DNA of 64,000 nucleotides from the IMG/VR virus record IMGVR_UViG_3300024252_000004, positions 62,001 to 126,000 of that record. One strand, given 5' to 3'. The position numbers were made by a program, and so were the translations under genes. Below the pieces are notes generated by a model. The model did not search any database. It worked only from the letters and a program-made list of their open reading frames with translations, and was not told the DNA's origin. The stretch's first letter is position 1; each line of letters begins with the position of its first letter. Shown here one piece after another: positions 30,304 through 54,800 of this stretch.

Positions 30304-31260
30304 ATGGAAGTTACATTTTTGACATTTAATTACGGCACAGCGGGACGATACGTAAACGGTCCCGGCATGTGTTTACATAATTTAGTAACCTACCTTAGAG
30401 ACTCAGCTTACACAGTTAATGTCTTTTCTGTTTTAGACTCTCCTTACGAAGGAGTTGCAGGGGTATCATCTATAAATAGAGTTAAGAAAGCAATTGATAG
30501 GTCAGACATCGTCCATCATTGGAGCGGACTCAATAAGAGTTTTTCATCTCTTTGTGCATACGCAAAGAAAAAGAATAAAGCGGTGCTTATCGGCCCCAAC
30601 CTTATAGACACTGTTGATTTTAAAAATGAGCAAGAGTACTTATCCAGAACCAAATATGATAAAATCTTGGTACCTAATTATAGACTGAAATACAAAGTTG
30701 CAAAAGAGCATGGCATCCCTTTGAATAAAATAGAAAAGTTCGTTGTGGGTCCAGATGCTGAATTATGGAAACCAGTTCTGGATGAAGAAAGGGAAGAATT
30801 CATACTATGGAAAGGTAACGGAAAGCAGTATGTTAAAGATGTGAAGTTCGGAATTGAGATAGCTAAAAGGTTAAAGGGAAAATATAAGTTTGAGTTTATG
30901 GGGCATCCAAAGCCTTATGTTTATGAGGCTCACATTGAAAAGGCCAAAAAAGCTAAGCTCTTCATATGCACTTCACTAAGTGAAACGATGGGTCTTGCTC
31001 TGTGGGAACAACATATGGCTGGAGTCCCATCTGTTGTTCATCCAAAGATATATATGCCTGGAATCAATTATACAACAGGCATCATAACTAATAGAACCAT
31101 TGAGGACTATGTGCAGGCTATTGATGAGATTATGTCAGATGATGTTCTGCATAAAAAGTTATCTTATGGAGCAAGTCGGCTCGCACACAAGGCATTCTCC
31201 GATGTGGAAATTGTACAGGAATATAACATAATTATGTATGGAGTTATAAATGCAAGTTAG
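30304..31260 (+). CDS. GT-B glycosyltransferase (GT4-like)
   Basis: FICTSLSETMGLALWEQHMAGVPSV motif. Confidence 0.68.
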   Translation: MEVTFLTFNYGTAGRYVNGPGMCLHNLVTYLRDSAYTVNVFSVLDSPYEGVAGVSSINRVKKAIDRSDIVHHWSGLNKSFSSLCAYAKKKNKAVLIGPNLIDTVDFKNEQEYLSRTKYDKILVPNYRLKYKVAKEHGIPLNKIEKFVVGPDAELWKPVLDEEREEFILWKGNGKQYVKDVKFGIEIAKRLKGKYKFEFMGHPKPYVYEAHIEKAKKAKLFICTSLSETMGLALWEQHMAGVPSVVHPKIYMPGINYTTGIITNRTIEDYVQAIDEIMSDDVLHKKLSYGASRLAHKAFSDVEIVQEYNIIMYGVINAS

Positions 31261-31912
31261 CGTAATCATTCCATTTAAAGATCCGAGTCCTAATCAGCTT
31301 CATAAAGCAATTCGTTCAGTAAGAAGCCAAACTCTTAAGGCTCATGAGATTATTCTGATTGACGATGGCTCAACGAAGATCGACTATACTTTTGGTAGAG
31401 ATATGAAACTGGTCAAGCTTGATGAGAATATGGGCCCTTCTGCTGCGAGAAATGCTGGAATAAAAAAATCTACAGGGCAGCTAATTAGCTTTCTTGACGC
31501 CGATGACTTTTGGCTGCCCAAGAAGCTTGAGCTTTCCGTCAAAGAATTCGAAAAGAGTCCCGACATTGGAATGACCTGTGGCAACTACAGATGGATGATA
31601 AATAACAAATTGTCCGGTCGTTTGTTCTATCGGACCGCACCAAGGATCACCTTTGAGACTTTAAAGAAGATTAACTATGTCGCCTCAGGTTCGGTAACTG
31701 TACGCAGAGATGTGCTTGATGACGTAGGAATGTTTAATGAGAAGTATTGGGTAGGGGAGGACTACGAACTGTGGTTAAGAATTGCAAGAAAATATCCTGT
31801 CAAATTCATCAACAAAGAACTCTATACCTACAGGAGAAATGACGGAGCAGAATCTCTATCTGTGAGAAAAGATATAGGCGACAAGGTTTTCAACATAAAG
31901 GATTTTAAATGA
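31250..31912 (+). CDS. GT2 glycosyltransferase
   Basis: VSVIIP, IDDGS, GPSAARN, FLDADD, EDYELWLR. Confidence 0.9.
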   Translation: MQVSVIIPFKDPSPNQLHKAIRSVRSQTLKAHEIILIDDGSTKIDYTFGRDMKLVKLDENMGPSAARNAGIKKSTGQLISFLDADDFWLPKKLELSVKEFEKSPDIGMTCGNYRWMINNKLSGRLFYRTAPRITFETLKKINYVASGSVTVRRDVLDDVGMFNEKYWVGEDYELWLRIARKYPVKFINKELYTYRRNDGAESLSVRKDIGDKVFNIKDFK

Positions 31913-32907
31913 GACGATACCTTATCAAGACCTACTGCTACGAATCCGGACTTTTCTATTTGTCTAAAAATCTTGGAGATAAGCTACTGTCCGAAGGGCA
32001 CGTTGTAGTCTACGCTCCTAAGGCTAAGTATATTTTGGATGGAAGAGTCTATAGGAGAGTTTATCCCAGCCAGAAGAACCCAGATGAGTTTAAGCGCGAT
32101 ATCATCCTGCCATTCACGGCAAAGCGTCCTGTTAGCTACCTGATGCACAACGCAATCATTAAATATAAGATTGATACAGTCATTTCTTTTGAGACTCTTA
32201 TGGAGAAAGGGCAATGGGTGGCAAAGATTAAAGCACGAGACAAGGTTAAGATGATTGATGTTCCGATGGTTGAATGGGTAACTCCTTCATATGTCAAGAA
32301 CGGGTCTTACGATGTGTTCGATGAGATTTGGTGCCTAACTGATTTAACTAAGCAGGTATTTGACATGCCCAAAGCCAAACGGGTAAACTTTGACCTTGTA
32401 GACCGGAGCATTTTTTATCCGCCGGAATCCAAGCAGAACGATATAGTCACATTCTATCATGCAGGAAGTCTGAATCCAGACCATAGCACAAAGAATACGG
32501 ACTTGGTTGTGGCTGCTTTTAACAGGTTTCTTAGGGTAAATAATCCCAAGGCAAAGCTTATATTCACTGGCTCAACAGAGCGTATTGCTATTGATAACCA
32601 TACTAATATTTTACATATAGATAGGGTACTTAATAGGAACGAAATCGGTAAAATATATAGAGAAGCTGATGTCGTATTGGCACCTTCTCAAAAGGAGGGG
32701 CTGGGTTTGAGTTTATATGAGGCCCAAGCTTGCGGTTGCAAAATCATTACCACAGATGCTGCACCGATGAACGAAGTTGAAGCAGACTACCTATGCAGAG
32801 TAGATAAGCTAAAAAGGGACAGGGGATTTATCCCATTGGCCTTTGTTAACGAAGACGAAATATATAATCAAATCAAACAAGCGTATGAGGATATCATCAA
32901 TGGCTAA
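31909..32907 (+). CDS. GT4-like glycosyltransferase
   Basis: APSQKEGLGLSLYEAQACGCKIITTD. Confidence 0.78.
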   Translation: MRRYLIKTYCYESGLFYLSKNLGDKLLSEGHVVVYAPKAKYILDGRVYRRVYPSQKNPDEFKRDIILPFTAKRPVSYLMHNAIIKYKIDTVISFETLMEKGQWVAKIKARDKVKMIDVPMVEWVTPSYVKNGSYDVFDEIWCLTDLTKQVFDMPKAKRVNFDLVDRSIFYPPESKQNDIVTFYHAGSLNPDHSTKNTDLVVAAFNRFLRVNNPKAKLIFTGSTERIAIDNHTNILHIDRVLNRNEIGKIYREADVVLAPSQKEGLGLSLYEAQACGCKIITTDAAPMNEVEADYLCRVDKLKRDRGFIPLAFVNEDEIYNQIKQAYEDIING

Positions 32908-34342
32908 ATACAAAGTAAGCGTAAGTGAAAAAGACGCAGCAGTAAAACCAAAGTCCGAACAAGATGTCGCAAATGAAAACGCAGCACTTATGGACGCATT
33001 CGAAACACCGGCCGAAACACCGGCCGAAACACCGGCTGAGGTGGCACCAGAGCCGGAGCGTAAGCTCGATCCGGACATTCTGGCGAGGCTTAAGGCGAAG
33101 AAAACAAAAGTAAAAAAGGAGGAACCTGTGCCTGAATTAGTTGAAGAGCAAGAGGTTAGCATTAATATTGGAGTTGTAGGAGTTGGACAGGCTGGTTCCC
33201 GTCTTGCTGAGCAGTTTCACAAGTTAGGGTATGACGTAGGCGTCATCAATACATCCGCACAGGATCTTAGGTTCGTTGACGTGCTTCCAACCCAGAAGCT
33301 ATTGCTTGAGGGAAGCCTTGGTGGTACAGGTAAGGACCTCGATCTCGGCCGAGAAATCTTCTCTGATAACACAGAGGTATGTGCTCAGTTCATTGATAGG
33401 ATTGCAGAAGGAAATGACATGCTTTTCCTTGCAATGTCTGGTGGAGGAGGTACTGGCTCAAGCTCCGTTGATACAATGGTTGAGCTTTGCTATTCGACCG
33501 GCATGCCTCTTGGGCTTATCTTCGTGCTTCCAAAAGCGACTGAAGATGCTCAGTCTAAGAAGAACTCCATTGAGACTCTTGCAAAGCTTGCAAGAATGAC
33601 AGCAGACGATAAGGTGTCTTGTTTGGTCGTAGCAGATAACGCACGTATCGAGCAGATCTATGGCGGGCTTGGTCAGTCTCAGTTCTGGAGCACGGCTAAC
33701 AACGCAATCGTTGAGCCTATCCACTTGTTCAACAGCCTTACTTCTCAGGCATCCAAGTACACCTCTATGGACCCGTCCGACTTTGGTAAGGTAATTTCTT
33801 GCGGTGACTGCTCGGTGTATGGAATGGTTGAAGTTGAAGATTACATGGATGAGGTTGGCATTGCAGAAGCAATGATGGACTCTCTTAATAGCAACATGCT
33901 CGCAGAAGGATTCGATCTTGCACAGACCAGAACCGGTGGCGTTATCATCGTAGGTTCTGAGGAAGCATTAGAGAACCTTCCGGCAATCAACATTGATTAT
34001 GCGTTCCACGTTATCTCTGAGCAGACTGAGGATGCCAACATCTATCGAGGCGTTTATGCGCAGGAGGGTGTTGAGAATGTAAGGGTATATACTTGGTTTG
34101 CAGGACTTGGTCTTCCTCAGGATAGAATCGAGAATCTTAAGAAGGAAAGCAAGGACGCGACTGCTGCTGCGGCAGCTAAGGAAGGAAAGAGAGCTTCCGC
34201 AATGACTCTTGACCTTGAAGAGAACAAGGTATCTTCCGTTAAGGATGAGATTCACAGAAAGATTCGAGGCAAGAAGTCTGGCTTTGGTAAGCTACAAGGT
34301 GGCACAAGGCGTTCTTTGATTGACCGAAGAAGAAAGAGATAA
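32900..34342 (+). CDS. Tubulin/FtsZ-family GTPase (phage TubZ/PhuZ-like)
   Basis: VGVGQAGSRLA, INTS..D, GGTGKD, SGGGGTGSS tubulin signature, DPSDF; start moved to ATG 32900 behind GAGG. Confidence 0.9.
   Translation: MAKYKVSVSEKDAAVKPKSEQDVANENAALMDAFETPAETPAETPAEVAPEPERKLDPDILARLKAKKTKVKKEEPVPELVEEQEVSINIGVVGVGQAGSRLAEQFHKLGYDVGVINTSAQDLRFVDVLPTQKLLLEGSLGGTGKDLDLGREIFSDNTEVCAQFIDRIAEGNDMLFLAMSGGGGTGSSSVDTMVELCYSTGMPLGLIFVLPKATEDAQSKKNSIETLAKLARMTADDKVSCLVVADNARIEQIYGGLGQSQFWSTANNAIVEPIHLFNSLTSQASKYTSMDPSDFGKVISCGDCSVYGMVEVEDYMDEVGIAEAMMDSLNSNMLAEGFDLAQTRTGGVIIVGSEEALENLPAINIDYAFHVISEQTEDANIYRGVYAQEGVENVRVYTWFAGLGLPQDRIENLKKESKDATAAAAAKEGKRASAMTLDLEENKVSSVKDEIHRKIRGKKSGFGKLQGGTRRSLIDRRRKR
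33002..33037 (+). repeat. 12-bp tandem repeat x3 (GAAACACCGGCC, encodes ETPA) in the tubulin N-terminal extension
   Basis: Read directly; third copy ends GCT. Confidence 0.85.
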
Positions 34343-34352
34343 TCTTCAAATG

Positions 34353-34378
34353 AAAAGGCCCCTTTCGGGGCCTTTTTT
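34353..34378. terminator. Bidirectional intrinsic terminator between convergent genes
   Basis: AAAA-GGCCCC-TTTC-GGGGCC-TTTTTT. Confidence 0.85.
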
Positions 34379-34379
34379 G

Positions 34380-34847
34380 TTACTTGAGTTTTGATTTTGC
34401 CGCAAGTATAAGTGCTTTGGTTTGTTCTTCTTCAGGGTCTCCACCGATAGCCAAAAGAAGCAGCTCTAAACTTTCTTTATTTGCAAGTCCTTTGCCGATA
34501 ATTGCACATGAAAGGCGAGTTGTTGCATCAATTTTTGCACCAGCAAAATTTACGTTTTCCAAATTGCAGCACCTAAGGTCTGCACCTCTTAAATCTGTTT
34601 TTCTAAAATCTGAATTACTCAGATCACACTTTTTCAATCCGGCCATTCTGAGGTCAGCATTCGAAAAGTCAGAATCAGATAAATCTTTTTCAAGAAGGTT
34701 TATTTTCTTGGGAGCACTCAGGCACCATTTTTTAAAAACAATAGAGTCCTTTGCTATGGGATTCTGAGGATCGACGGGGTCCGGTGGCCTTCCGGCGCCA
34801 AGAAGAGCTTTTTTATGATCTTTGATTAATTTTTCTATATTCATCAT
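34380..34847 (-). CDS. Pentapeptide-repeat protein
   Basis: DLSDS DFSNA DLRMA GLKKC DLSNS DFRKT DLRGA DLRCC NLENV NFAGA. Confidence 0.85.
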   Translation of the reverse strand: MMNIEKLIKDHKKALLGAGRPPDPVDPQNPIAKDSIVFKKWCLSAPKKINLLEKDLSDSDFSNADLRMAGLKKCDLSNSDFRKTDLRGADLRCCNLENVNFAGAKIDATTRLSCAIIGKGLANKESLELLLLAIGGDPEEEQTKALILAAKSKLK

Positions 34848-34853
34848 CTATCC

Positions 34854-36806
34854 TTATGCTGGTGCTGCGGTAGTCCGCGCCCTAATGTTTTGCAAAGCAC
34901 CTGAGGATCCGGCAGGTAGAGTTTCCGCCGCCCAGGTAATACCATCTGTAGAGGCAATGCATTCAGTATTTGTACCTACTGCTACAAATTCACCAGCTCC
35001 AGCATCCCACTGAACTTGGTTTAGAGTTTCTGATGTTCCTGAAGTTCGTGAGGTCCACGCTACACTGGTCGGATCGGTAGTGGTGTAAATGACTCCACTA
35101 ACACCAACTGCGACCCATAAACTCCCGTCAGGCTTGCACGCTACACCATAGAAATTGGTAGAAGCATAAGCGACAGTTGTATCCCAGGTAGTGCCCTCAT
35201 TAGATGAGAAACCCATGACTCCCCAGGTTGAAGACGAACCAACGCAAACCAGCGTAGTGCCATCCGTACACATCTTTCGTGGGAAACCCTGCGTCCATCC
35301 CCCCAGGACACGTTCGGTCCAAGTTCCGCTTGGGGCACCATCACAAGTAGACAAATGTGGCTGTCCGTTACCGCTGTTCCAGTGCCATCCGCAAACAACT
35401 ATCCGGCCACTTGCAAAAGAGATATAATCATCTGGTATTGAATAGTTGTTACCACTCCAATCCCCACCGCTGTTGAATCGCATAGTAGAGAAGCTGCTGA
35501 AGTTGCCATCAGTTAGTACGTCAGCAATAGCTTTGTAAGTGCCTCTGCCGTTGTTGTGGCCAAACAACACATATCCATTTACATCATCAACATAAGTGGT
35601 TTGTGCAGCGTAACTGGTGCCGCCAATGTTTGTATTGCCGTTCCACGTCGGAGTCACAATATCCGTTGACTGGAGCGTGTCTGCATTAGTAGTCTGATCA
35701 AATCTGCACAACATTACCAAGAAATTGTCTGTGTCCTCACTGATATCAATATCCAGAAGGTTTTGCCCACTCCAAACAAGATCCACTTCCCATGAACCAC
35801 CAGCGTGACGATAGTAAACGTATCCATCATCGCTGACAATCATGAGCAGCGTGCTCGTGTCAGGAGTAATTACAACCTGAACTGTGCTCGTTGTATATCC
35901 TAATCCGCCTTCGTTATCAACAGATAGAGTGAACTCGTACTCTCCTCCAGCGCCAGAACCACCACCTGCGCTGAGATTTGTAGCTGCGGCTATCGAAACA
36001 GTTCCATCTGATCCTCCGCTTAGGGAGAAGCTTGCGGCATCTGAACCTCCAAGTGTCGCTCCACTTGAGTCTGTAGGGCCTCTAAAGTCTATTGAGCCAG
36101 CACCCCATCCGCTTGTTGCATTAGACACATTCGTAGTATTTATTGACTGCGTGTCATCATCGGGATCCAAAGCTCCTCCGCCACTTGCTGCTGCAATGCT
36201 AACAGTGTGAACGGATACAGATAATACTTCATTTCCGGTATTCCTTGCTTGCAGTACTAAGGCGAATGAATCGCCATCAGCATGTCCGCTGAAAGTATAA
36301 GCTCCTAATCCGGAGCCACCAGCAATTGCCGTTGAACCCACAAGGTTTAATATTATCGCGTTATAATTATCTATTCTGTTATCTGAGTCTGTAAATGCAG
36401 AGAATGTCTTTGAGGATGGTGAGCCTCCAGAGCTAACATCTTCATTCGTTGGAGCAGCAGAGCTTACAATTGCATCAGCAGGATCAACGCTAACAGTATG
36501 CGCAGCAGATGCCAAAACCTCATTCGAAGAGTTCCTTGCTTGTAAGAATAATACAAACGAGTCACCGTCAGAATAGCTACTGAAGCTATAAGGGCCTAGC
36601 CCTGAACCTGATACTCCAGAGGAGCCTACCAGATTTGAAATTACAGCATTATAGTTGTCAATTAGACTGTCGGTATCTGTGAAAGCAGAGAATGTTTTTC
36701 CGCTTGGAGTACCGCCTGTGGATACATCCTCATTCGTTGGGGATGGCGCGACAACAACAGCGCCACCTCCACCACCTGTTGAAGAGATTCCTCTTAGTTT
36801 AGCCAT
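34854..36806 (-). CDS. Putative virion fibre/adhesin: two ~96-aa repeats, cadherin-like segment, C-terminal beta-propeller-like region
   Basis: PTNEDVS...DNYNA...LQARN...HTVS twice; G/S/T-rich; repeated W-T/S motifs (TWTER, TTWDT, AWTSR, ITWAA). Confidence 0.65.
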   Translation of the reverse strand: MAKLRGISSTGGGGGAVVVAPSPTNEDVSTGGTPSGKTFSAFTDTDSLIDNYNAVISNLVGSSGVSGSGLGPYSFSSYSDGDSFVLFLQARNSSNEVLASAAHTVSVDPADAIVSSAAPTNEDVSSGGSPSSKTFSAFTDSDNRIDNYNAIILNLVGSTAIAGGSGLGAYTFSGHADGDSFALVLQARNTGNEVLSVSVHTVSIAAASGGGALDPDDDTQSINTTNVSNATSGWGAGSIDFRGPTDSSGATLGGSDAASFSLSGGSDGTVSIAAATNLSAGGGSGAGGEYEFTLSVDNEGGLGYTTSTVQVVITPDTSTLLMIVSDDGYVYYRHAGGSWEVDLVWSGQNLLDIDISEDTDNFLVMLCRFDQTTNADTLQSTDIVTPTWNGNTNIGGTSYAAQTTYVDDVNGYVLFGHNNGRGTYKAIADVLTDGNFSSFSTMRFNSGGDWSGNNYSIPDDYISFASGRIVVCGWHWNSGNGQPHLSTCDGAPSGTWTERVLGGWTQGFPRKMCTDGTTLVCVGSSSTWGVMGFSSNEGTTWDTTVAYASTNFYGVACKPDGSLWVAVGVSGVIYTTTDPTSVAWTSRTSGTSETLNQVQWDAGAGEFVAVGTNTECIASTDGITWAAETLPAGSSGALQNIRARTTAAPA

Positions 36807-37461: not shown

Positions 37462-38913
37462 ATGACGAAAATTATTGTAGGAAATAACAGATGCAAACTG
37501 ATGTCATTGCAAGATGATGAGATTCTGCGAGAGCTTGATACTCGTCTTTCTTACATGGTGCAAGGTTTTCAGTTTATGAATGTCCGCAACAATTGGGATG
37601 GGCGGCATAGGCTTCTCGATAGGAAGGGATTCTTTCCTGTCGGGATGTTGCCTACAGTTGAGTCTATCTTGAGGAAAAATGGTCATCCGTATCAGATAGT
37701 AGACAACAGACCACCATTAAATTATCAAAACAAAATGGTTATCAATCCGAAATCTGGTTTTGAACATAGAGACTATCAGGTAGAGCTTATTGATGCTGCA
37801 TGGAAACACAAAGGTGGCATCGTTCGTGCGGCTACCGGAGCGGGAAAAACCTTTTGCATTGCCAGCATAGCAGCTAAGTTCGGAGTTAAGACAATTGTAT
37901 ATGTAATTGGCATCGAACTACTGTATCAGATGAAGGGAACTTTTATGAAAGCATATCCTCATTTGAATGTGGGTATGGTTGGTGATGGAAATTGTGACAT
38001 CGGCGATATTACGATTATGACAATCTGGAGTGCAGCGGCAGCTTTCAATCAGAAAGTCAAGTTGACCGATTCTGATCTAACTAACGACTCGGCTCGTAAG
38101 AATAAAAACCTGAACAAAGCATTAGTTCAGAAGGCAGTTAAAGATGCGGAGCTATTCATTCTTGATGAGTGTCAGTACGCAGCATCTCAGACTGTGCAAT
38201 TTTTGGACAGAGTATCTGTGAATGCAAGACACAGGTTCCTTTTGTCAGGAACTCCATGGAGGGAGTCTGGTGACGATCTTCTTATCGAAGCAGTAGGTGG
38301 CCCAAAGTTTTTTGATATGTCTGCTACAAAGCTTATTAATGCAGGTTGGCTGGTAAAGCCAGAGATTCACTTTATCAATGTGCCTTTGAAAAGAGGCATC
38401 GGGAAAAAGTACCATGAGGTCTATGAGAACTTCATTGTAGAAAATGAAGATAGGAATGGTAGGATTATAGCTGCAACTAAGAAGCTTGTCGCAAGTGGAA
38501 AGAAATGTTTGATTCTTGTAACTAAGCTTAGTCATGGCAAAAAGCTTTTAGGAATGTTAGAGCAAGACCTTAGAGTAGCATCTCTGGACGGAAGCAATAA
38601 AACTGTAGATAGATTAGCAGCAATCAAGAGTATGCAAGATGGTGATCTTGATGTGCTTGTAGCATCAAAGATTTTCGATCAGGGTATTGATATTCCTCAG
38701 CTTGATGCATTGATTCTCGCTGGCTCTGGTAAGTCAAGCGCAAGAGCATTACAGAGGATTGGGCGAGTCATTAGAAATTATCCTGGGAAAGAGAAGGCTA
38801 TCGTGGTTGATTTCTACGATAACTGCAAATTCCTTAGGGAGCATTCTAAAGCAAGGCTTAAGGTTTACAAAACCGAACCAGGATTTCAGATTAAGATGCC
38901 GAGAAAGAAATGA
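37462..38913 (+). CDS. SF2 helicase (UvsW/Res-III-like)
   Basis: AATGAGKT, ILDECQ, LSGTP, IFDQGIDIP, QRIGRVIR. Confidence 0.9.
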   Translation: MTKIIVGNNRCKLMSLQDDEILRELDTRLSYMVQGFQFMNVRNNWDGRHRLLDRKGFFPVGMLPTVESILRKNGHPYQIVDNRPPLNYQNKMVINPKSGFEHRDYQVELIDAAWKHKGGIVRAATGAGKTFCIASIAAKFGVKTIVYVIGIELLYQMKGTFMKAYPHLNVGMVGDGNCDIGDITIMTIWSAAAAFNQKVKLTDSDLTNDSARKNKNLNKALVQKAVKDAELFILDECQYAASQTVQFLDRVSVNARHRFLLSGTPWRESGDDLLIEAVGGPKFFDMSATKLINAGWLVKPEIHFINVPLKRGIGKKYHEVYENFIVENEDRNGRIIAATKKLVASGKKCLILVTKLSHGKKLLGMLEQDLRVASLDGSNKTVDRLAAIKSMQDGDLDVLVASKIFDQGIDIPQLDALILAGSGKSSARALQRIGRVIRNYPGKEKAIVVDFYDNCKFLREHSKARLKVYKTEPGFQIKMPRKK

Positions 38914-44250: not shown

Positions 44251-44527
44251 TTTCGTATGTGACAAGTGTGAAGCAGTATCCACTGAAGTTATGAGCATAT
44301 CAAGCTTCATGAAACAGCGGAGCAATCCTGAGGAGTGTTGTGAGTGTTCCGAAGGAAAAGTCTTGGTTTCCTTATCCCCTCCTACGGGCAGGATAGAGAA
44401 AAGGAAAGAAGATATTATACAAGAGATAGAGGACGAAGTACGAGAAATCGTAAAAAAGGTACGTGAGGGTGACGAAGCAGCCATCGAGGATGTGTACGGA
44501 CACCGCGAGAACCCATACAAAAAATGA
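44237..44527 (+). CDS. FmdB-family zinc-ribbon protein
   Basis: MPVYNFVCDKC...CCEC; GAGGAG RBS. Confidence 0.8.
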   Translation: MPVYNFVCDKCEAVSTEVMSISSFMKQRSNPEECCECSEGKVLVSLSPPTGRIEKRKEDIIQEIEDEVREIVKKVREGDEAAIEDVYGHRENPYKK

Positions 44528-46455
44528 CTAACGGAGAACAGATGACATCAGCAGATTCATTACTTGAGCTTGTAAGTTCCCACATGGAGCAGAGTAAGCA
44601 GGAAGCATGGGAAGGTACCCTTGGAGAGTACTTAAAGATGGTGGTCGATGACCCATCTATTCACATGGGAGCACACGAACGAGTTCTTAGAATGATTGAG
44701 AGCCATGGTTTTGAGACGGACGAAGAAGATGAGGTAACTCAGTATAATTTCTTCAAAGATGACCTATTCGGTGTGCAGGATCAGATCGAAGAGTTTATGA
44801 AGTACCTTAGGGCTGCCGCAGCAGGCAGTGAAGTCGGTCGTAGAATCCTTCTTGTATACGGACCAACATCATCCGGCAAGTCCCAACTGGCCATCCTTTT
44901 GAAGAGAGGGCTTGAGGCTTTCTCCAAGACAGAGGACGGTGCATTATACGCATTCTCCGATTCGCCGATGAACGAAGATCCAATGACGGCAATCCCTATG
45001 GAGCTTAGAGGTAGGCTGCGTGAGGAGTATGGTATTCGCGTCCAGGGAGAACTATCTCCCTACATGGAGGCTATTCTTAAAGAGAAGTATGGTGGAAACA
45101 TCATGGAGCTACCGGTTCGTAGGATTTTCATCTCCGAAAGGGCAAGAAACTGCATTGGTACTTTCGTACCTTCCGATAAGAAGAGTCAGGATATCTCTGA
45201 GCTTGTTGGCTCCATTGATCTTAGTAAGATTGGTAAGTACGGCACAGAGTCTGACCCAAGAGCTTACAAGTTCGATGGCGAACTCATGGTTGCTAACCGT
45301 GGCATGATGGAATTTGTTGAGATGCTCAAGGTTGATCAGAAGTTCCTTTACGTTCTTCTCACCCTTGCTCAGGAAAAGAACATCAAGACCGGAAGGTTCC
45401 CGCTTATCTATGCGGACGAATTTGTTCTCGCTCACACTAACGAGACTGAGTACAAGAGATTCCTTGGGAAAGATGAGATGGAGGCACTCCATGATAGAAC
45501 TATTGTTCTACGATTCCCATACAACCTCAGTGTCAATGAGGAAGTAAGGATTTACGAGAAGCTCATTCGTCAGGCGAATTTCAAGGGTGTTCACATTGCA
45601 CCACATACGTTAAGGTGCGCAGCAATGTTCTCTATCCTTTCGAGACTAATTGAATCTGACCACCAGGGGCTTAGCACTCTGAACAAGATGAGACTATACA
45701 ACGGTGATGAGGTTGATGGATTCTCTAAGCACGAAGTACCTAAGTTCAAGGGAGAATTCAAAGATGAAGGAATGGTTGGAGTATCTCCACGATACGTTAT
45801 CAACAGAATCTCTTCCATCCTTGCTTCTGGCAAGAAGGGTTACATCACTCCGGTTGATATCGTAAGATCCCTTAGAGATGGGCTTGAATCTAACCCTAAG
45901 GTTGACGAGAAAGAACAGAACAGATTAGAGGGTATCCTTACTGCTGTAATTGAAGAATACACCAAGATGGCAATGAACGATGTTCAGAAGGCATTCTTCG
46001 TTAACTTCGAGAGCGAGATCGAAAACCTTCTCAAGAACTACCTTGACCATGTTGAGGCATACCTTGACGGTCATATGCTTGAGGATGAGTGGGGCAATGA
46101 TGTTCAGCCAGATGAGAGACTCATGAGAAGCGTCGAAGAGAAGATTAGAATCTCCGACTCTGGCAAGAGATCTTTCAGGCAGGAAGTGTATCGTAAGATG
46201 CTTCGTTCGGCAAGAGATAACGATGGTACCCTTTCCTACAAGGAGCACCCAAGACTCAAGGAAGCGCTTGAGAAGCAGCTTTTTGACGAGAGACGTGACG
46301 TTATCAGAATCACTGTTAGTTCCAGAAACCCAGATGAGGAAGAGCTTAAGAAGATCAATGTTGTCATCGAGACCCTTGCGGACCATCACGGTTACACTGT
46401 CGGAAGTGCCAACGAATTGCTTAGATACGTTAGCTCACTTATGGCAAGAAACTAA
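44524..46455 (+). CDS. prkA: PrkA/YeaG-family AAA+ protein
   Basis: DDLFG, YGPTSSGKS, IGTFVPSDKKSQD, DPRAY, ANRGMMEFVEMLK, HIAPH, GVSPRY. Confidence 0.93.
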   Translation: MTNGEQMTSADSLLELVSSHMEQSKQEAWEGTLGEYLKMVVDDPSIHMGAHERVLRMIESHGFETDEEDEVTQYNFFKDDLFGVQDQIEEFMKYLRAAAAGSEVGRRILLVYGPTSSGKSQLAILLKRGLEAFSKTEDGALYAFSDSPMNEDPMTAIPMELRGRLREEYGIRVQGELSPYMEAILKEKYGGNIMELPVRRIFISERARNCIGTFVPSDKKSQDISELVGSIDLSKIGKYGTESDPRAYKFDGELMVANRGMMEFVEMLKVDQKFLYVLLTLAQEKNIKTGRFPLIYADEFVLAHTNETEYKRFLGKDEMEALHDRTIVLRFPYNLSVNEEVRIYEKLIRQANFKGVHIAPHTLRCAAMFSILSRLIESDHQGLSTLNKMRLYNGDEVDGFSKHEVPKFKGEFKDEGMVGVSPRYVINRISSILASGKKGYITPVDIVRSLRDGLESNPKVDEKEQNRLEGILTAVIEEYTKMAMNDVQKAFFVNFESEIENLLKNYLDHVEAYLDGHMLEDEWGNDVQPDERLMRSVEEKIRISDSGKRSFRQEVYRKMLRSARDNDGTLSYKEHPRLKEALEKQLFDERRDVIRITVSSRNPDEEELKKINVVIETLADHHGYTVGSANELLRYVSSLMARN

Positions 46456-46808
46456 TGTTCTTCGGCATCATGAAGAATGAGGTTACCTCGGCGCCAGTAG
46501 AGGCGCTGAGGGAAGCCCTTACCGATGAGTTTGGTGACGACATTAGATTTTCTCAAGGTGTTCTGCTTGTTGCTTGCTCATTAGAGTTTGCGGCGAATCC
46601 CATGAGGACCAGAATCGTGTATGCAAAAGATCCTGATGGTGAGTTTGACGCGATGGTTAAAGAGGCTGTTGAGCGGATTATGTTTGAAGTGAAAAGCTCA
46701 GAGACAGATCTTTCTGATTATGAATTCTCGCTTTCTTGTTTGCCGTGTGAAGAGGCAGATTCCCTTTCGATTGGATTCGTACTTTGGGTTAATGGATGTT
46801 GTAAGTAA
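46455..46808 (+). CDS. Hypothetical protein
   Basis: TAATG-coupled to PrkA. Confidence 0.55.
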   Translation: MFFGIMKNEVTSAPVEALREALTDEFGDDIRFSQGVLLVACSLEFAANPMRTRIVYAKDPDGEFDAMVKEAVERIMFEVKSSETDLSDYEFSLSCLPCEEADSLSIGFVLWVNGCCK

Positions 46809-46820
46809 CATGGGAAGATT

Positions 46821-47171
46821 ATGAATATATTGAAAATATATGCTATGATAAAACAAAGGCTGGAGAATTTAAAACTTTCCGAGGATTTCTTTACGCTTGA
46901 TAATGTTCCTTTGGAGGCGCTCCCTATATATCTAGGGCAAAGTTTCAATGGATATAGTAATGAGGATGGAAGCTTTTCTTTCCAAAATAGCTTCATTGAT
47001 ATCATAGAACTTGGGCAACCATTTAGTACAGATGAAACCGAAGAGGAGACTGTGAATCGTTTGGTATCTTTTCTCAAAGAGTACCGTGCAGAACTTGGGC
47101 AAGACCCGTTTCAGTTGGTTATATCTGTTAAAGATACGAAAGATTGTTACGGAATCTTAGCTGTACATTAA
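46821..47171 (+). CDS. Hypothetical protein
   Basis: 116-aa in-operon ORF. Confidence 0.55.
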   Translation: MNILKIYAMIKQRLENLKLSEDFFTLDNVPLEALPIYLGQSFNGYSNEDGSFSFQNSFIDIIELGQPFSTDETEEETVNRLVSFLKEYRAELGQDPFQLVISVKDTKDCYGILAVH

Positions 47172-47184
47172 ACCAGGAGAAGTA

Positions 47185-47295
47185 ATGACTATTATAATTA
47201 ATTATGGAAAAAGTACATTTATAGAGTCTGATGCTTATGAAGATGAAAATCAAAACCATGATACAATAAGAATAGTGTCTGGTATGGAGGAGTAA
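47185..47295 (+). CDS. 36-aa small protein (MTIIINYGKSTFIESDAYEDENQNHDTIRIVSGMEE)
   Basis: Hand-translated; GGAG RBS upstream; fills the gap before YeaH; not in the ORF track. Confidence 0.45.
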   Translation: MTIIINYGKSTFIESDAYEDENQNHDTIRIVSGMEE

Positions 47296-47296
47296 A

Positions 47297-48466
47297 ATGT
47301 CTGATAGTCTTTCTGATATTTGGAAACTGAAGAAACGTGGTAAAAGAGATTCTGATCGACATGAAGAGCTTGTCAAAAGAGCAATCAGAAAGCATGGGCG
47401 AGACGTAATCACAGAGTATAACATCATTCGTTCTTCAGGCTCCAAGAAAGTTAAGATTCCTGTAAGGTTTCTTGATAAGCATACGTTCAAATATGGAAAA
47501 TGGAAAGATGACTCTCAGGTTGGTCAAGGTCAGGACGTAGTCCCCGGAAAAAACTATGAAGTTAAGAAGGGACAAGCTGCTCCTGGCGGCCCAGGAGACC
47601 AAGAGGGCGAGAGAATTTTTGAAGCTGAAATCTCTGTAGATGAGTTGGTCAACATGCTAATGGAAGAGTTAAATCTTCCATGGATGGAGCCAAACAAGTC
47701 CAGTCAGATTGAAGTAGTTCATGAAGAAGTTTCGTCAATCGATAGAAAGGGAATCTTCCCAAATCTTGACATCAAAAGAACTCTCCTTCAGAACATCAAA
47801 AGGAATGCTGCGCTTGGAAATCCACACGTTGGAGATTTTCATAACGAAGACCTCAGATATAAGGTGTGGGAAGAGGAGACTGAGTACGTCTCAAATGCTG
47901 CGGTCTATATCATGATGGATAGATCTGGCTCTATGGATGACAAGAAGACCTATATTGCTAAGAGCTTCTACTTCTGGATGGTTCAGTTTCTAAAAAGACG
48001 TTATCAAAATGTTGAGTTAATCTTCATTGCTCATGATACAACTGCATTTGAAACTACAGAAGAAGAGTTCTTTACGATTTCGGCAAGCGGTGGAACTAAG
48101 TGCAGTTCTGCATTCAAGTTCGCTCTTGATCATATCAAGAATAACCATCCGCCAGATGATTGGAACAATTACGTTTTTGAGTTCAGCGATGGCGACAACT
48201 GGATGCAGGATAACAGAGAGTGCGTAGGTCTTGTAAGGGAGCTATTGCCTTTATGCACTGCAATCGGGTATGGTGAAATTGTGCCGGACGAGCAAGCGGA
48301 GCTACCTTGGTTCAAGGAAGAAGATAAGCTTTACAACGTGTTCAATAATGAGATTTCAAGAACGCGATTTGTATCCTTAAGAGTTAACTCTAAAGATGGC
48401 GTTTTCGATGCTCTAAAGCAATTCTTTAACGTTAATGGTGTGTCAAAAAAGGCTGAAAAGAAATGA
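47297..48466 (+). CDS. yeaH: YeaH/YhbH-family (DUF444) vWA protein
   Basis: RDSDRH, PGDQEG, EDLRY, MMDRSGSM, FIAHDT, GGTKCSSA, EFSDGDNW. Confidence 0.93.
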   Translation: MSDSLSDIWKLKKRGKRDSDRHEELVKRAIRKHGRDVITEYNIIRSSGSKKVKIPVRFLDKHTFKYGKWKDDSQVGQGQDVVPGKNYEVKKGQAAPGGPGDQEGERIFEAEISVDELVNMLMEELNLPWMEPNKSSQIEVVHEEVSSIDRKGIFPNLDIKRTLLQNIKRNAALGNPHVGDFHNEDLRYKVWEEETEYVSNAAVYIMMDRSGSMDDKKTYIAKSFYFWMVQFLKRRYQNVELIFIAHDTTAFETTEEEFFTISASGGTKCSSAFKFALDHIKNNHPPDDWNNYVFEFSDGDNWMQDNRECVGLVRELLPLCTAIGYGEIVPDEQAELPWFKEEDKLYNVFNNEISRTRFVSLRVNSKDGVFDALKQFFNVNGVSKKAEKK

Positions 48467-51806: not shown

Positions 51807-54800
51807 ATGTTTATTCAAAATATCTCTCAAGAAGTATGGGGCGGAGAAGCTGGTAAGTATAGGCTTCGTGATTCCGAAGGACAACCCATCGATCTAACAC
51901 CTGAAGACACCTGTTTGAGAGTCGCAAAAGGGTTAGCATCACTTGAGCCAAAACCAGAAGAATGGGAAGTTGAGTTTTCCAGAATTCTATTAGAAGGTAA
52001 GTTCGCAGGTGGCGGACGTATTATGGCCAATGTCGGCGCTGGCGACCTCAAGCGAGACGCCAGCCCGATTAACTGTACGGTGCTCAGGCAGATCCCTGAC
52101 TCGATGGATGGCATCATGCAGACCGCCAAAGAATCTGCGATGACACTGCGCACAGGCGCTGGTGTGGGCTATGATTTCAGCCCAATTAGGCCAAGCGGCG
52201 CGTATGTATTTGGCGCAGGAGCAGAGACTTCTGGCGTCATTTCTTTTATGAAAATCTTCGATGCAACGTGCAGCACAGTTATGAGCGGCGGTGGCAGACG
52301 TGGAGCCCAAATGGGTTGCCTCGACATTCAGCATCCAGAGATTGAGAATTTCATCACTTGTAAAAGAGAAGATGGCGTTCTTAGATATTTTAACTTATCT
52401 GTTTTAATCACAGATGCTTTCATGACGGCTGTTAGAGATGATGCCATGTGGAAGCTATGGTTCTGGGAGCGTTGCGAGAAATGTGACATAGAGGAAATTG
52501 GTGCAGATGAGGTTGCAGTGATGAAAGCTGGAGATATCCCTTTCAGATATCCTGAATACGATTACTTCAGTTATGCAGCAGATCACACTGAAGTCCTTAG
52601 CGGTAACTGCGAAGTAGGAACTATCTTTAAGAAGAGAGTATTCAAGGTGCTTAGAGCCGTTGAACTCTTTGATAAGATTATGACATCAACATACAATTTC
52701 GCCGAGCCTGGATTCATTCTTATCGATAGGGTGAACAGAGATAATATCCTTTGGTTCTGTGAAGTTATTAGAGCTACGAATCCATGTGTACCTTCTGATA
52801 CCTGGGTTCATACAGAAGAAGGCCCGAAGCAGGTTTCCGATCTTATAGGTCAAGAATGCACCTTGATGGTGAACGGAAAGCCATATCAATCAGAAGGATT
52901 TTTTAAAACCGGATATAAATCGGTTTTGAATTTAGAAACCAAAGAAGGCTTCAAATTAAGATTAACTCCTAATCATAAAGTTATGGTAGTAAGCTCCAAT
53001 AATGGTGATAAAATTATTTCCAATTGGAAAGAAGCAGGCGAAATTGAGATTGGTGATAAAGTTATTCTTCATGATCATAGTGATTCTGCTTACTGGTTAG
53101 GAACAGACAAAATGAATGGAGTCTACTCTGTAGATCAGGGATACCTGATGGGGCTACTCGTTGGGGACGGAACGCTGAAGAAAGATTCTGCTATCCTGTC
53201 CGTTTGGAGTTCTGACAATGAAAATGGTTATGAGTCTATTATGTCTCGTGTAAATATGTCGATAAGACACCTTAAGAAAAGAGCAGATTTTAAGGGTTGG
53301 CACAAAATAGCTGGCCGAAATGAGTATAGGCTTAAGTTGTCTGGAATAAGAGATTTGGCGCATGAATTTGGAATGAGCAATCAAAACAAGTTTATTACTC
53401 CTAAAATGGAGAAAGCATCTCATGCCTTTTCTGCCGGGTTCTTAAGGGGGCTTTTTGATGCAGATGGCTCGGTCCAAGGCGATCAAAGCAAAGGAGTTTC
53501 TGTAAGGCTTGCTCAAAGTAACTTAGAGACCTTGGAAGCTGTGCAAAGAATGCTTCTTAGATTTGGAATCGTATCTAAGATTTACAAATTCAGGCGAGAA
53601 AGTGGAGAGTCACTTTTGCCTAACGGGAAAGGTGGAAAGAAACTTTATAAGACAAAAGCTCAGCACGAATTAGTTATTAGCAAAAGTAATTTAAAAACTT
53701 TTGAGAGATTGATTGGCTTTGCTGATGACACTAAGCATTCTAAATTAGTAAACTTATTAAGTGACTACAAAAGAGAATTAAACAAAGAAAGTTACGCAGT
53801 AACGATATCATCAATTAGTGACGGAGGCATTTGCGACGTTTATGACGTACAGGTTCCAGGTATAAACGCTTTTGATGCAAACGGCATTTATGTTCATAAT
53901 TGTGGCGAACAGCCTTTACCTGCCAATGCAAGTTGCCTATTGGCTTCAATGATTTTAGCTCCATATGTGATGAATAAATTTGCGGATGATTCCTTTTTTG
54001 ATTGGGAGGCTTTCGAAGTAGATATTGCTGTCGCTACAAGGATGATGGACAACGTTGTTGAGATCAACAACCTGCCTCTGCCTGAAATGAGAGAGCAGAT
54101 TCTCCAGAAGAGAAGGCATGGCTTAGGCTTCACAGGTCTTGGCACTGTATTTAACATGCTCGGCATGTCTTATGGTGATGATGCTTCTCAGGCGTTCGCA
54201 GATAAGATTGCATACACGATTGCAAAAGTATCTCTATTTATGAACATGGAGCTTGCGCAAGAGAAAGGACATGCTCCCATTTTCGACACGATAGTGTCCA
54301 GACAGAACGCTATTGATTCAGGATATATGAAGAGGTTGTTATCAACCTTTGATGACGATTTAAGGCATGGATTAGAGCAGGAGATTCTTGAGCATGGTCT
54401 CAGATTCTCTCACGCTACCAGCATTGCACCAACAGGAACCATGAGTTTAACTTGGGGTAACAACTGTAGCAATGGTGTTGAGCCGAGCTTCACTGATGAG
54501 TACGCAAGAAACTTCAGGCAGCATGGAAAGAAGACGAAGGTTCAGGAAATCGTAAGAAGTCTTGAATACCATCTATGGATAGAGATGTATGGTGACAGAG
54601 AGCTACCAAGTCATTGGAGGGTTTCCAATGACCTATCTGTCGAAGATCATATCAACATCCAGGCAAAGATTCAGAAGTGGGTTGACTCTGCCGTATCTAA
54701 GACGGCAAATGTTCCTACTGATTACCCATTCGAGGATTTCAAAAAGATCTACATGATGGGATGGGAGAAGGGGCTTAAGGGCATCACCACCTTCAGGTAT

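What the first reader, a model, noticed from the sequence alone, without database searches (positions are those of the whole stretch)
32900..34342. Tubulin/FtsZ-family GTPase with disordered N-terminal extension and basic C-tail
Seen: tubulin signature GGGGTGS, an ~85-aa low-complexity N-terminus with ETPA x3, and a C-terminal ...GGTRRSLIDRRRKR. Known: PhuZ/TubZ spindles position the DNA or nucleus of some jumbo phages. Inference: this phage may organise its replication compartment. The long N-extension is atypical for PhuZ.
Basis: partly seen in the sequence, partly recalled or inferred. Interest (0 to 1): 0.6.

Follow-up and report, generated by a model that had tools for sequence, protein, structure and literature searches.

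The report
Megaphage TubZ-like tubulin coupled to glycosyltransferase
An uncultured 395-kb phage encodes a real tubulin/FtsZ-type GTPase, but it resembles plasmid TubZ rather than the PhuZ of nucleus-forming phages. It belongs to a large virus-only family whose members lie next to, or are fused to, a sugar-transferring enzyme, which suggests a filament that works with glycan synthesis.

Summary
Window 32900-34342 (+) is a 480-aa ORF with Pfam Tubulin (1.3e-12) and TubZ-like_C (1.2e-6) domains, the SGGGGTGSS signature, an (ETPA)x3 repeat and the basic C-terminus. The PhuZ/replication-compartment inference is not supported. The complete 395-kb viral genome has no detectable chimallin or phiKZ-type RNA polymerase, and both searches found their target in phiKZ. 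The closest solved structures are plasmid TubZ (Z 38.9), and the C-tail is basic.

The new point is context. The protein belongs to a large virus-only family. In 19 of 20 related loci the gene order is GT1-GT2-GT1-TubZ-UvsW. In 58 of 121 homologues the upstream GT4-type glycosyltransferase is fused in frame to the tubulin, and fusion or fission happened at least 7-10 times. The "atypical N-extension" is therefore the interdomain linker of that fusion. It carries one motif found only in the GT-linked family. The C-terminal 45 residues are a strongly conserved basic peptide, not generic disorder.

Best model: a GTP-driven TubZ-like filament that carries or positions a glycosyltransferase and docks a second, unknown partner through its tail. 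DNA positioning or partition is the main rival. No function was tested.

The parts
30304..31260 (+). GT1a: group-1 glycosyltransferase, first gene of the conserved GT1-GT2-GT1-TubZ block
   Evidence: Pfam PF00534 1.8e-7; homologue present at this position in 16 of 20 related loci
31250..31912 (+). GT2: family-2 glycosyltransferase
   Evidence: Pfam PF00535 1.6e-25; conserved position in related loci
31909..32907 (+). GT1b: GT-B fold, GT4-type glycosyltransferase with an E-x7-E motif; fused in frame to the tubulin in 58 of 121 homologues
   Evidence: Pfam PF00534 3e-15, PF13692 1.9e-14; E263 and E271 invariant in 58 sequences; AF2 pLDDT 92.5, best folds MshA/WbnH/BshA/PglA/PimA; fusions
32887..32891 (+). 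Shine-Dalgarno-like GAGGA, 8 nt upstream of the tubulin ATG; a similar element is kept in front of the junction ATG in fused genes
   Evidence: read; all 9 fused loci have GAGGA or AAGGA at about -12, and split loci mostly have a similar element; the script picked an earlier Met in 2 loci, which were read by eye
32900..34342 (+). TubZ-like tubulin/FtsZ-superfamily GTPase, 480 aa (P0001)
32900..33154 (+). N-terminal extension (aa 1-85), homologous to the GT-tubulin interdomain linker of fused relatives
   Evidence: BLASTP of GT1b plus P0001 covers fused proteins end to end, and a junction Met is present in all 58 fusions
32969..33001 (+). Motif 1 (aa 24-34, ExENxxLMxAF), predicted helix 20-35; specific to the GT-linked family
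   Evidence: E26, N27, L30 and A33 >=90% conserved; present in 106 of 121 family members and 2 of 69 distant relatives; pLDDT about 83
33001..33036 (+). (ETPA)x3: perfect 12-nt x 3 tandem repeat inside the variable acidic part of the linker
   Evidence: the variable segment is 7-29 aa with mean charge -2.7 across the family
33068..33103 (+). Motif 2 (aa 57-68, DxxxLxxLKxK), predicted helix 58-69; shared with the nearest non-GT-adjacent clades, so possibly the counterpart of TubZ helix H0
   Evidence: L64 invariant, L61 and K67 >=90%; present in 112 of 121 family members and 17 of 69 distant relatives; present in L024. The H0 equivalence is inference.
33155..33661 (+). GTPase (Rossmann-type) domain, aa 86-254, with T1 GVGQAG (94-99) and the T4 signature SGGGGTGSS (180-188; nt 33437-33463)
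   Evidence: Pfam 89-254; G94, G96, Q97, G99, G182-G184 and G186 invariant in 121 sequences
33770..33784 (+). T7 (synergy) loop D291-P-S-D294-F, the polymerisation-dependent GTPase-activating residues
   Evidence: invariant in 121 sequences; aligned to the FtsZ 'nvDfaDv' loop
33731..34141 (+). TubZ-like C-terminal domain (aa 278-414), followed by a long helix 407-435
   Evidence: PF22453; helix in the AF2 model; the alignment to TubZ-Bt 2xka runs to model residue 446
34205..34339 (+). Conserved basic C-terminal peptide (aa 436-480): TLDL..K454..K458-x-S-G-F462-x-x-L465-Q466...S472-x-I-D-x-R477
   Evidence: K454, K458, F462, L465, Q466, S472 and R477 invariant; net charge of the last 30 residues is +11 on average (range +6 to +14); the motif persists in relatives down to about 31% identity
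34352..34377 (.). Strong terminator-like hairpin (11-bp stem, 6 GC) between the convergent TubZ and pentapeptide-repeat genes; it ends the GT-TubZ gene run
37462..38913 (+). UvsW-type helicase, the conserved downstream neighbour; here separated from TubZ by a local insertion
   Evidence: Pfam UvsW_N/ResIII/Helicase_C; downstream of TubZ in all 20 loci, in L030 and L031 and in distant relatives

Best explanation
The gene encodes a TubZ-like member of the tubulin/FtsZ superfamily. It most likely binds GTP and forms head-to-tail filaments in which the T7 loop of one subunit activates GTP hydrolysis in the next. This step is inferred from invariant motifs and the fold. The filament does not appear to position a phage nucleus. 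It is instead functionally coupled to the GT4-type glycosyltransferase encoded just upstream. In about half of the family the two are one polypeptide: GT domain, an ~85-aa acidic linker, then tubulin. In the window they are two translationally coupled genes. The N-extension is that linker. Its family-specific motif 1 is the best candidate for keeping contact with the GT (inferred). The invariant basic C-terminal peptide would dock the polymer to a second partner that is still unknown: an adaptor protein, DNA or the membrane (inferred by analogy with the C-terminal peptides of FtsZ and TubZ). The net effect proposed is a cytomotive scaffold that concentrates or moves a glycan-building enzyme set (GT1-GT2-GT1, fed by the phage's large sugar-nucleotide island) inside the infected cell. 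Because an SD-like element and an ATG are kept at the junction of fused genes, those genes may yield both GT-TubZ and free TubZ, giving filaments only partly decorated with enzyme (speculative).
For: Identity and fold:
- Pfam Tubulin plus TubZ-like_C.
- Family profile against PDB sequences: B. cereus TubZ/RepX 1.1e-26, FtsZ about 1e-13.
- AF2 core pLDDT 85-94.
- VIA Z 38.9 to TubZ 4ei7 and 2xka, CetZ 34.9, FtsZ <=32.8.
- T1, T4 and T7 residues invariant in 121 sequences.

GT coupling:
- 58 of 121 homologues are GT1::tubulin fusions.
- GT1b and P0001 together align over the full length of the fusions.
- The fused/split state changes at least 10 times on the family tree, 7 forced by well-supported branches, against a mean of 40 in label shuffles.
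- A true split inside the fused clade (L030) and a fusion inside the window's own 4-member clade (L031) were confirmed on DNA.
- The block GT1a-GT2-GT1b-TubZ is found in 19 of 20 loci from contigs up to 422 kb.
- The GT keeps an invariant E-x7-E and a confident GT-B model, so it is under selection as an enzyme.
- Motif 1 of the linker occurs in 106 of 121 family members but only 2 of 69 distant relatives, and the three distant relatives tested for it and checked (P0126, P0127, P0131) lack a directly abutting GT1b.
- More distant relatives still sit at the 3' end of a sugar/GT gene block.
- The window carries a ~21-kb glycan island upstream.

Tail: invariant peptide with charge +11, kept down to about 31% identity.

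Junction: an SD-like element lies before the junction ATG in fused and split loci. All 7 Glu codons at that site in fused loci are GAG, against a 41% GAG background.
Against: No experiment, and no direct evidence of polymerisation or of GT-TubZ contact. The GT1b plus TubZ complex prediction gave no verdict. Adjacent overlapping genes fuse easily by 1-nt changes, so fusions could be tolerated rather than selected. The SD-like GAGGA also encodes the conserved residues Y-E-D, so it need not be a ribosome site. The gene is just as constantly next to replication genes (UvsW, DnaC-like, DnaB), and in more distant relatives the immediate upstream gene is an epimerase-like gene, not a GT. Synteny alone therefore cannot assign it to the glycan module. 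The GT's substrate is unknown.
Confidence: 0.5

Rival explanations
1. It is a DNA-positioning or partition motor, as in plasmid or prophage TubZ. Treadmilling filaments would bind phage DNA through the basic C-tail, directly or via an unrecognised adaptor, and centre or segregate replicating or pseudolysogenic genomes. The GT fusion would be incidental.
For: The closest characterised relatives are plasmid TubZ/RepX. The tail is strongly basic and conserved. The gene always lies just upstream of UvsW, DnaC-like and DnaB replication genes.
Against: No small TubR-like gene abuts it. The plasmid TubZ genes and phage G gp138 each have a 98-119-aa ORF immediately upstream, whereas here that position is held by a 332-aa glycosyltransferase. 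Fusion to an apparently active GT recurs and persists. No centromere-like repeats were looked for.
Confidence: 0.27
2. It is a PhuZ-type spindle that centres a chimallin-bounded phage nucleus.
For: It is a phage tubulin in a jumbo genome, with a weak PhuZ PHROG hit of 1.4e-4. One large quick tree placed phiKZ PhuZ inside the wider clade.
Against: Chimallin is absent by protein and by profile search with a positive control. The phiKZ-type RNAP beta domain is absent, with a positive control. BLASTP to phiKZ PhuZ gives 26% identity over 109 aa, E 5e-4. BFVD PhuZ gives TM 0.47/0.62 at 12% identity. PhuZ's nested placement disappeared in a reduced tree, where it is unresolved on a branch of length 5.8, and its supposed sisters are not PhuZ-family proteins. 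The tail is basic.
Confidence: 0.03
3. It is a captured host FtsZ, or an FtsZ mimic that interferes with host cell division, or the contig is cellular.
For: Automatic annotations call relatives 'cell division GTPase FtsZ'. FtsZ structures match with Z about 30-33.
Against: The NCBIfam ftsZ equivalog scores 46.8 bits against a cut-off of 295.2. Pfam's FtsZ_C and CetZ_C domains are not hit, but TubZ-like_C is. E. coli FtsZ lies outside on both trees. Only one locus was found in 185,579 species genomes, on a 16.5-kb MAG contig with the same phage gene order. The nearest Atlas clusters are 70-100% viral, the best two 96-97%. The genome is a complete virus record.
Confidence: 0.05

Closest known systems
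Plasmid TubZ / RepX (B. cereus pXO1-like TubZ 4ei7; B. thuringiensis pBtoxis TubZ 2xka/2xkb/3j4s)
   Same: Best sequence match (profile E 1.1e-26) and best structure match (Z 38.9, rmsd 2.6-2.7 over 343-358 residues, including the long C-terminal helix). Shares the Pfam TubZ-like_C domain and a flexible basic C-terminal tail.
   Different: Only 18-24% identity. There is no upstream TubR-like gene. It has an ~85-aa N-extension or GT fusion and its own invariant tail motif. It is encoded by lytic-looking megaphages next to glycan and replication genes, and forms a separate well-supported clade.
PhuZ (phiKZ gp39, 201phi2-1 gp59) of nucleus-forming Chimalliviridae
   Same: A phage-encoded member of the tubulin/FtsZ superfamily in a jumbo genome.
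   Different: Weak similarity; no chimallin and no phiKZ-type RNAP in the genome; a basic tail where PhuZ, from my own knowledge, has an acidic one; PhuZ has no GT link.
Clostridium phage c-st TubZ (3v3t, 4xcq)
   Same: A phage TubZ with the same fold (Z 32-33; profile E 1.3e-9).
   Different: From my own knowledge it belongs to a TubZ-TubR-TubY partition cassette of a plasmid-like prophage. No such partner genes are adjacent here.
Bacillus phage G gp138 (FtsZ/tubulin-like)
   Same: The only hit among 50,697 deposited phage records (26% identity over 242 aa, E 7e-14); also from a megaphage.
   Different: 376 aa, no N-extension and no GT neighbours, with a small upstream ORF gp137. It groups with plasmid TubZ, though by a long-branch join. 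It was not detected in the phage G proteome (PMC12484599).
FtsZ and archaeal CetZ
   Same: Same two-domain fold and the same GTP-binding and T7 motifs. FtsZ also uses a conserved C-terminal peptide after a disordered linker to recruit partners, and guides glycan (cell-wall) synthases (established knowledge).
   Different: Far below the ftsZ equivalog cut-off. No FtsZ_C or CetZ_C domain. Lower profile and structure scores. CetZ could not be put in the tree.

Membership tests
Tubulin/FtsZ superfamily | GTPase domain with the G-box signature (G/A)GGTG(S/T) and T1-T6 nucleotide loops | tested here: met
   PF00091 48.9 bits against cut-off 33; SGGGGTGSS at 180-188; invariant G94, G96, Q97, G99, G182-184 and G186
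Tubulin/FtsZ superfamily | T7/synergy loop with acidic catalytic residues that complete the neighbouring subunit's active site | tested here: met
   D291-P-S-D294 invariant in 121 sequences and aligned to the FtsZ NxDFAD loop
Tubulin/FtsZ superfamily | GTP-dependent polymerisation | not testable with these tools
   Inferred from motifs and fold only
TubZ (type III partition motor) | TubZ-type C-terminal domain and long C-terminal helix | tested here: met
   PF22453 29 bits against cut-off 26; helix 407-435 in the model; alignment to 2xka extends to residue 446, Z 38.9
TubZ (type III partition motor) | Operon partner TubR (small DNA-binding adaptor) and a centromere next to tubZ | tested here: not met
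   The upstream gene is a 332-aa glycosyltransferase in the window and in 19 of 20 loci. Plasmid TubZ genes and phage G gp138 do have a 98-119-aa upstream ORF. A distant TubR elsewhere in the genome was not searched for.
TubZ (type III partition motor) | Groups with plasmid TubZ/RepX in a phylogeny | tested here: not met
   The family lies in a separate well-supported clade (99-100 SH-aLRT); plasmid TubZ and phage G fall elsewhere. These were quick searches with long reference branches.
PhuZ | Match to the PhuZ family profile | tested here: not met
   phrog_4733 E 1.4e-4, partial; BLASTP to phiKZ PhuZ E 5e-4 over 109 aa
PhuZ | Co-occurrence with the chimallin shell and a multisubunit phage RNAP | tested here: not met
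   No hit at E<=10 for phrog_4795 or phiKZ gp54; PF00562 absent; both controls positive in phiKZ
PhuZ | Acidic C-terminal tail that inserts into the next subunit (from my own knowledge of Kraemer et al. 2012) | tested here: not met
   The last 30 residues carry a net charge of about +11
FtsZ | Reaches the ftsZ equivalog score; FtsZ_C domain | tested here: not met
   TIGR00065 46.8 bits against 295.2; PF12327 not among hits at E<=1
CetZ | CetZ_C domain; archaeal clade | tested here: inconclusive
   No CetZ_C hit; CetZ structures score Z 33.7-34.9, below TubZ; no CetZ sequence could be placed in the tree
GT4-type (GT-B, retaining) glycosyltransferase: the upstream or fused partner | GT-B fold, PF00534 domain and E-x7-E motif | tested here: met
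   PF00534 3e-15; E263 and E271 invariant; model pLDDT 92.5, with top folds MshA, WbnH, BshA, PglA and PimA

The most novel reading that the evidence does not exclude
A virus-built cytomotive filament that carries an enzyme. In this reading, treadmilling TubZ-like polymers are decorated with a tethered glycosyltransferase. In fused genes one ORF would yield both the tethered and the free subunit through an internal start. The polymers would act as a moving or localised glycosylation line for virion, DNA or envelope glycans in megaphage-infected cells. That would be a phage analogue of FtsZ-guided cell-wall synthesis and a third job for phage tubulins, beside plasmid-like partition and nucleus centring.
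Probability: 0.25. Interest if true: 0.8.

Novelty: new variant of a known kind. Interest (0 to 1): 0.6.

Why it matters
Phage tubulins are currently known in two roles: TubZ for partition of plasmid-like prophages, and PhuZ for centring the phage nucleus. Here a third lineage is numerous: 168 clusters at 50% identity score E<=1e-30, and 1410 score E<=1e-3. Its nearest ESM Atlas clusters are mostly viral and it occurs in megaphages of up to about 430 kb. It has its own invariant C-terminal docking peptide and a recurrent covalent link to a glycosyltransferase. If the link is functional, a cytoskeletal polymer is being used to organise an enzyme pathway in a virus-infected bacterium. It also means the common assumption that a tubulin in a jumbo phage implies a phage nucleus should not be made without chimallin. 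The proteins are small and soluble-looking, and can be tested directly in E. coli.

Tried and rejected
- Complex prediction of GT1b (A2) with TubZ (A1): no verdict (score 0.23, mark 0.32). This is not evidence either way.
- AU test of 'PhuZ outside the 62-member clade' on the 141-row tree did not finish in four runs, one of which returned no answer. I replaced it with a 46-row tree in which PhuZ is unresolved.
- The nested placement of PhuZ in the big quick tree is rejected as a long-branch effect.
- Megablast of 20 kb against deposited phages: no match.
- T4 Gp23 capsid and sheath Pfam families: no hit in the genome, and the Gp23 control rang nowhere, so this is uninformative.
- The listing of cluster members gave no names or accessions.
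- The small ORF between GT1 and TubZ in L036 is unrelated to the linker.
- Literature searches found no description of a GT-tubulin fusion or of this family. The library lacks most subscription journals.
- The phage lineage and host were not resolved. PrkA hits only Thermus phages and huge-phage contigs at <=36% identity.
- No alternative genetic code was used; the window reads open in table 11.
Full report
**1. Observation.**
- Window 32900-34342 (+) is an ATG-initiated ORF of 480 aa (P0001).
- The ETPA repeat is a perfect 12-nt x 3 tandem DNA repeat at 33001-33036.
- The start codon overlaps the stop of the upstream gene by 8 nt (ATGGCTAA). A GAGGA lies 8 nt upstream.
- A strong hairpin terminator at 34352-34377 follows the stop codon.
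- Pfam gives Tubulin (E 1.3e-12, aa 89-254) and TubZ-like_C (E 1.2e-6, aa 278-414), both above their curated cut-offs.

**2. The genome.**
- The window is bases 62001-126000 of a 395,127-bp IMG/VR virus record that CheckV rates 100% complete. It contains one tubulin gene.
- The genome has 44 tRNAs and a tmRNA.
- A terminase large-subunit domain lies at the contig end.
- It has no near relative among 50,697 deposited phage records. Only Bacillus phage G gp138 matches the protein, at 26% identity.
- An identical 13-kb stretch lies in a second IMG/VR contig of 236 kb.

**3. Which kind of tubulin.**

By sequence:
- The single protein and the 121-sequence family profile both rank B. cereus pXO1-type TubZ/RepX first (E 1.7e-14 and 1.1e-26).
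- FtsZ follows at about 1e-11 to 1e-13, then c-st TubZ and TubZ-Bt.
- The ftsZ equivalog scores 46.8 bits against a cut-off of 295.
- The PhuZ PHROG scores 1.4e-4. BLASTP to phiKZ PhuZ gives 26% identity over 109 residues.

By structure:
- An AlphaFold2 model built on the family alignment has pLDDT 85-94 over residues 85-435.
- Its best solved-structure matches are TubZ 4ei7 and 2xka (Z 38.9, rmsd 2.6-2.7, 343-358 residues, including the long C-terminal helix).
- CetZ (34.9), c-st TubZ (33.1) and FtsZ (<=32.8) follow.
- Among predicted viral structures, PhuZ reaches only TM 0.47/0.62 at 12% identity.

By phylogeny, using quick IQ-TREE searches with an E. coli FtsZ outgroup:
- The family is a well-supported clade (99-100) nested in larger clades of unnamed metagenomic proteins.
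- It is separate from plasmid TubZ and phage G.
- PhuZ sits on a very long branch. A nested placement in the 141-row tree was not reproduced in a 46-row tree, where it is unresolved.
- PhuZ's apparent sisters in the large tree are not PhuZ-family proteins.
- CetZ sequences could not be obtained for the tree.

**4. The nucleus hypothesis.**
- phiKZ chimallin as a protein and the chimallin profile phrog_4795 find nothing in the whole genome at E<=10. The same profile scores 1.8e-232 in phiKZ.
- The RNA polymerase beta domain PF00562, detected in phiKZ, is absent here.
- According to Iyer et al. 2021 (PMC7824862), phage tubulin and the multisubunit RNAP co-occur in nucleus-forming phages. That pattern is missing here.
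- The replication-compartment inference is therefore not supported.

**5. A large viral family with its own hallmarks.**
- The word-index search returned 378 or more homologues at 57-86% identity, on contigs up to 422 kb and including Tara Oceans assemblies.
- The exhaustive search of 50%-identity representatives found 1410 proteins at E<=1e-3, 553 at <=1e-10 and 168 at <=1e-30.
- The nearest ESM Atlas clusters are 70-100% viral, the best two 96-97%.
- A pattern scan of 185,579 species genomes found one locus, a 16.5-kb MAG contig with the phage gene order.
- In the family alignment the nucleotide loops and the T7 loop D291-P-S-D294 are invariant. This points to a polymerising GTPase.
- The C-terminal 45 residues are not generic disorder. 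K454, K458, F462, L465, Q466, S472 and R477 are invariant, and S460, I474 and D475 are conserved in 119-120 of the 121 sequences. The last 30 residues carry about +11 charge.
- A recognisable S-x-F-G-K-L ... (I/V)(I/V)-D-(K/R)-R-(K/R) tail persists in relatives down to about 31% identity.

**6. The glycosyltransferase link.**

Fusion:
- 58 of the 121 listed homologues are proteins of about 800-830 aa. In these a group-1 glycosyltransferase (PF00534/PF13692) precedes the tubulin.
- The window's upstream gene GT1b (31909-32907) and P0001 together align along the whole of these fusions.

Junction:
- Every fusion keeps a Met at the junction.
- On DNA, fused and split loci alike keep GAGGA, AAGGA or GGAGA 5-9 nt before that ATG.
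- All seven Glu codons at that spot in fused loci are GAG, against a 41% GAG background. This hints at a retained internal start, but the same bases also encode conserved residues.

History of the fusion:
- On the family tree the fused/split state changes at least 10 times. Seven changes are forced by well-supported branches, against a mean of 40 in shuffles.
- A few 'split' entries longer than 490 aa may be truncated calls.
- A true split inside the fused clade (L030) and a fusion in the window's own 4-member clade (L031) were checked on DNA.

State of the GT:
- It keeps an invariant E-x7-E.
- It folds confidently (pLDDT 92.5) as a GT-B, GT4-like enzyme resembling MshA, WbnH, BshA, PglA and PimA.

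Linker motifs:
- Motif 1 (ENxxLMxAF) occurs in 106 of 121 family members but only 2 of 69 distant relatives.
- Motif 2 (DxxxLxxLKxK) extends to the neighbouring clades.
- The three distant relatives tested for motif 1 and checked (P0126, P0127, P0131) lack it and also lack a directly abutting GT1b. So does P0138, which fell outside the motif-1 tally and was only tested for motif 2.

**7. Neighbourhood.**
- The order GT1a-GT2-GT1b-TubZ-(0-2 genes)-UvsW occurs in 19 of 20 loci. It continues with a DnaC-like gene, DnaB and PrkA/DUF444/SpoVR.
- In relatives at 39-47% identity the tubulin still sits between a sugar/GT/epimerase block and UvsW.
- Upstream, the window carries a ~21-kb glycan island. 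It includes a GT1, NeuB, a KdsA-like gene, two cytidylyltransferases, a SIS isomerase, methyltransferases, a sulfotransferase, GDP-mannose dehydratase, a GT29-like gene, UDP-glucose dehydrogenase and an epimerase.
- Plasmid TubZ genes and phage G gp138 have a small, TubR-sized ORF directly upstream. This family has the GT in that position.
- In the window two minus-strand genes lie between TubZ and the FA-hydroxylase/UvsW genes: a pentapeptide-repeat protein and a 650-aa repeat protein. They are missing in the close relative L031.

**8. Interpretation.**
- Shown: a TubZ-like fold; intact GTP-binding and T7 motifs; viral origin; no chimallin or phiKZ-type RNAP; recurrent fusion and constant adjacency with an apparently active GT; a family-specific linker motif; an invariant basic tail.
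- Inferred: polymerisation; physical cooperation between filament and GT; the tail acting as a docking peptide; dual products from fused genes.
- The main rival is a DNA-positioning or partition role using the basic tail, given the constant proximity to replication genes.
- The complex prediction gave no verdict.
- No paper in the searchable library describes a GT-tubulin fusion or this family.

**9. Verdict.**
- The protein is a new member of a known superfamily. Its architecture and context (GT tether, own tail motif, no TubR, no nucleus) make it a new variant of phage tubulin systems.
- Confidence that it is a TubZ-like GTPase is about 0.95.
- Confidence that it works together with the glycosyltransferase is about 0.5-0.6.
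- No specific cellular role is established.

Noticed in passing
relatives P0146, P0148, P0183, P0227, P0251, P0254 (not in the window): Inteins with LAGLIDADG homing endonucleases sit exactly inside the tubulin signature of distant TubZ-like relatives (GGGG|C...HN|TGSG). The +1 extein residue is the T/S of GGGTGS. Pfam found an intein domain in 9 of the 30 long relatives scanned.
   Followed up: partly
L030:7341-9878; two tblastn pieces in L011, L014, L015, L017, L020: The UvsW helicase next to the tubulin is interrupted by an intein or homing-endonuclease insertion in several related phages. The window's copy (37462-38913) is uninterrupted.
   Followed up: no
window 34380-36806 (-): A pentapeptide-repeat protein (155 aa) and a 650-aa protein with an internal duplication and no Pfam or PHROG hit lie on the opposite strand in a slightly GC-richer stretch. 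They are absent at this position in the close relative L031, so this looks like a local insertion.
   Followed up: partly
window 154-21000: A large sugar-nucleotide and glycan island: a GT1, NeuB, a KdsA-like gene, two CMP-sugar cytidylyltransferases, a SIS isomerase, FkbM and other methyltransferases, a sulfotransferase, GDP-mannose 4,6-dehydratase, a GT29-like sialyltransferase fragment, UDP-glucose dehydrogenase and an epimerase. GC drops to 0.35-0.39 at 8-18 kb.
   Followed up: partly
G000:C1:159306-325615 (outside the window): 44 tRNA genes, including a tRNA with a CUA anticodon (302460-302537) that would read TAG, plus a 403-nt tmRNA (325213-325615). The window's genes read open in table 11, so no recoding was assumed.
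   Followed up: no
window 51807-54989 (+): The ribonucleotide reductase large subunit is 1060 aa, and its PHROG matches fall in two blocks (about 16-331 and 708-992). It may carry an intein; this was not checked.
   Followed up: no
window 44524-51036 (+): A triad like PrkA, DUF444 and SpoVR, conserved downstream in related megaphages. The third ORF (48463-51036, 857 aa) also has an endonuclease-like stretch. The nearest phage PrkA homologues are Thermus phages and >590-kb metagenomic phages at <=36% identity.
   Followed up: partly
L009 (IMGVR_UViG_3300024258_001044, 236 kb): A second IMG/VR contig carries a 13-kb stretch whose encoded proteins are 100% identical to the window's around the tubulin gene. 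It is probably the same phage assembled as a shorter contig.
   Followed up: no
L008 (WLOB01000045.1, 16.5 kb, 'Actinomycetota bacterium' MAG): The only cellular-genome hit carries the full GT1-GT2-GT1-TubZ-UvsW phage gene order. It is probably a phage contig binned into a MAG rather than a host gene.
   Followed up: partly
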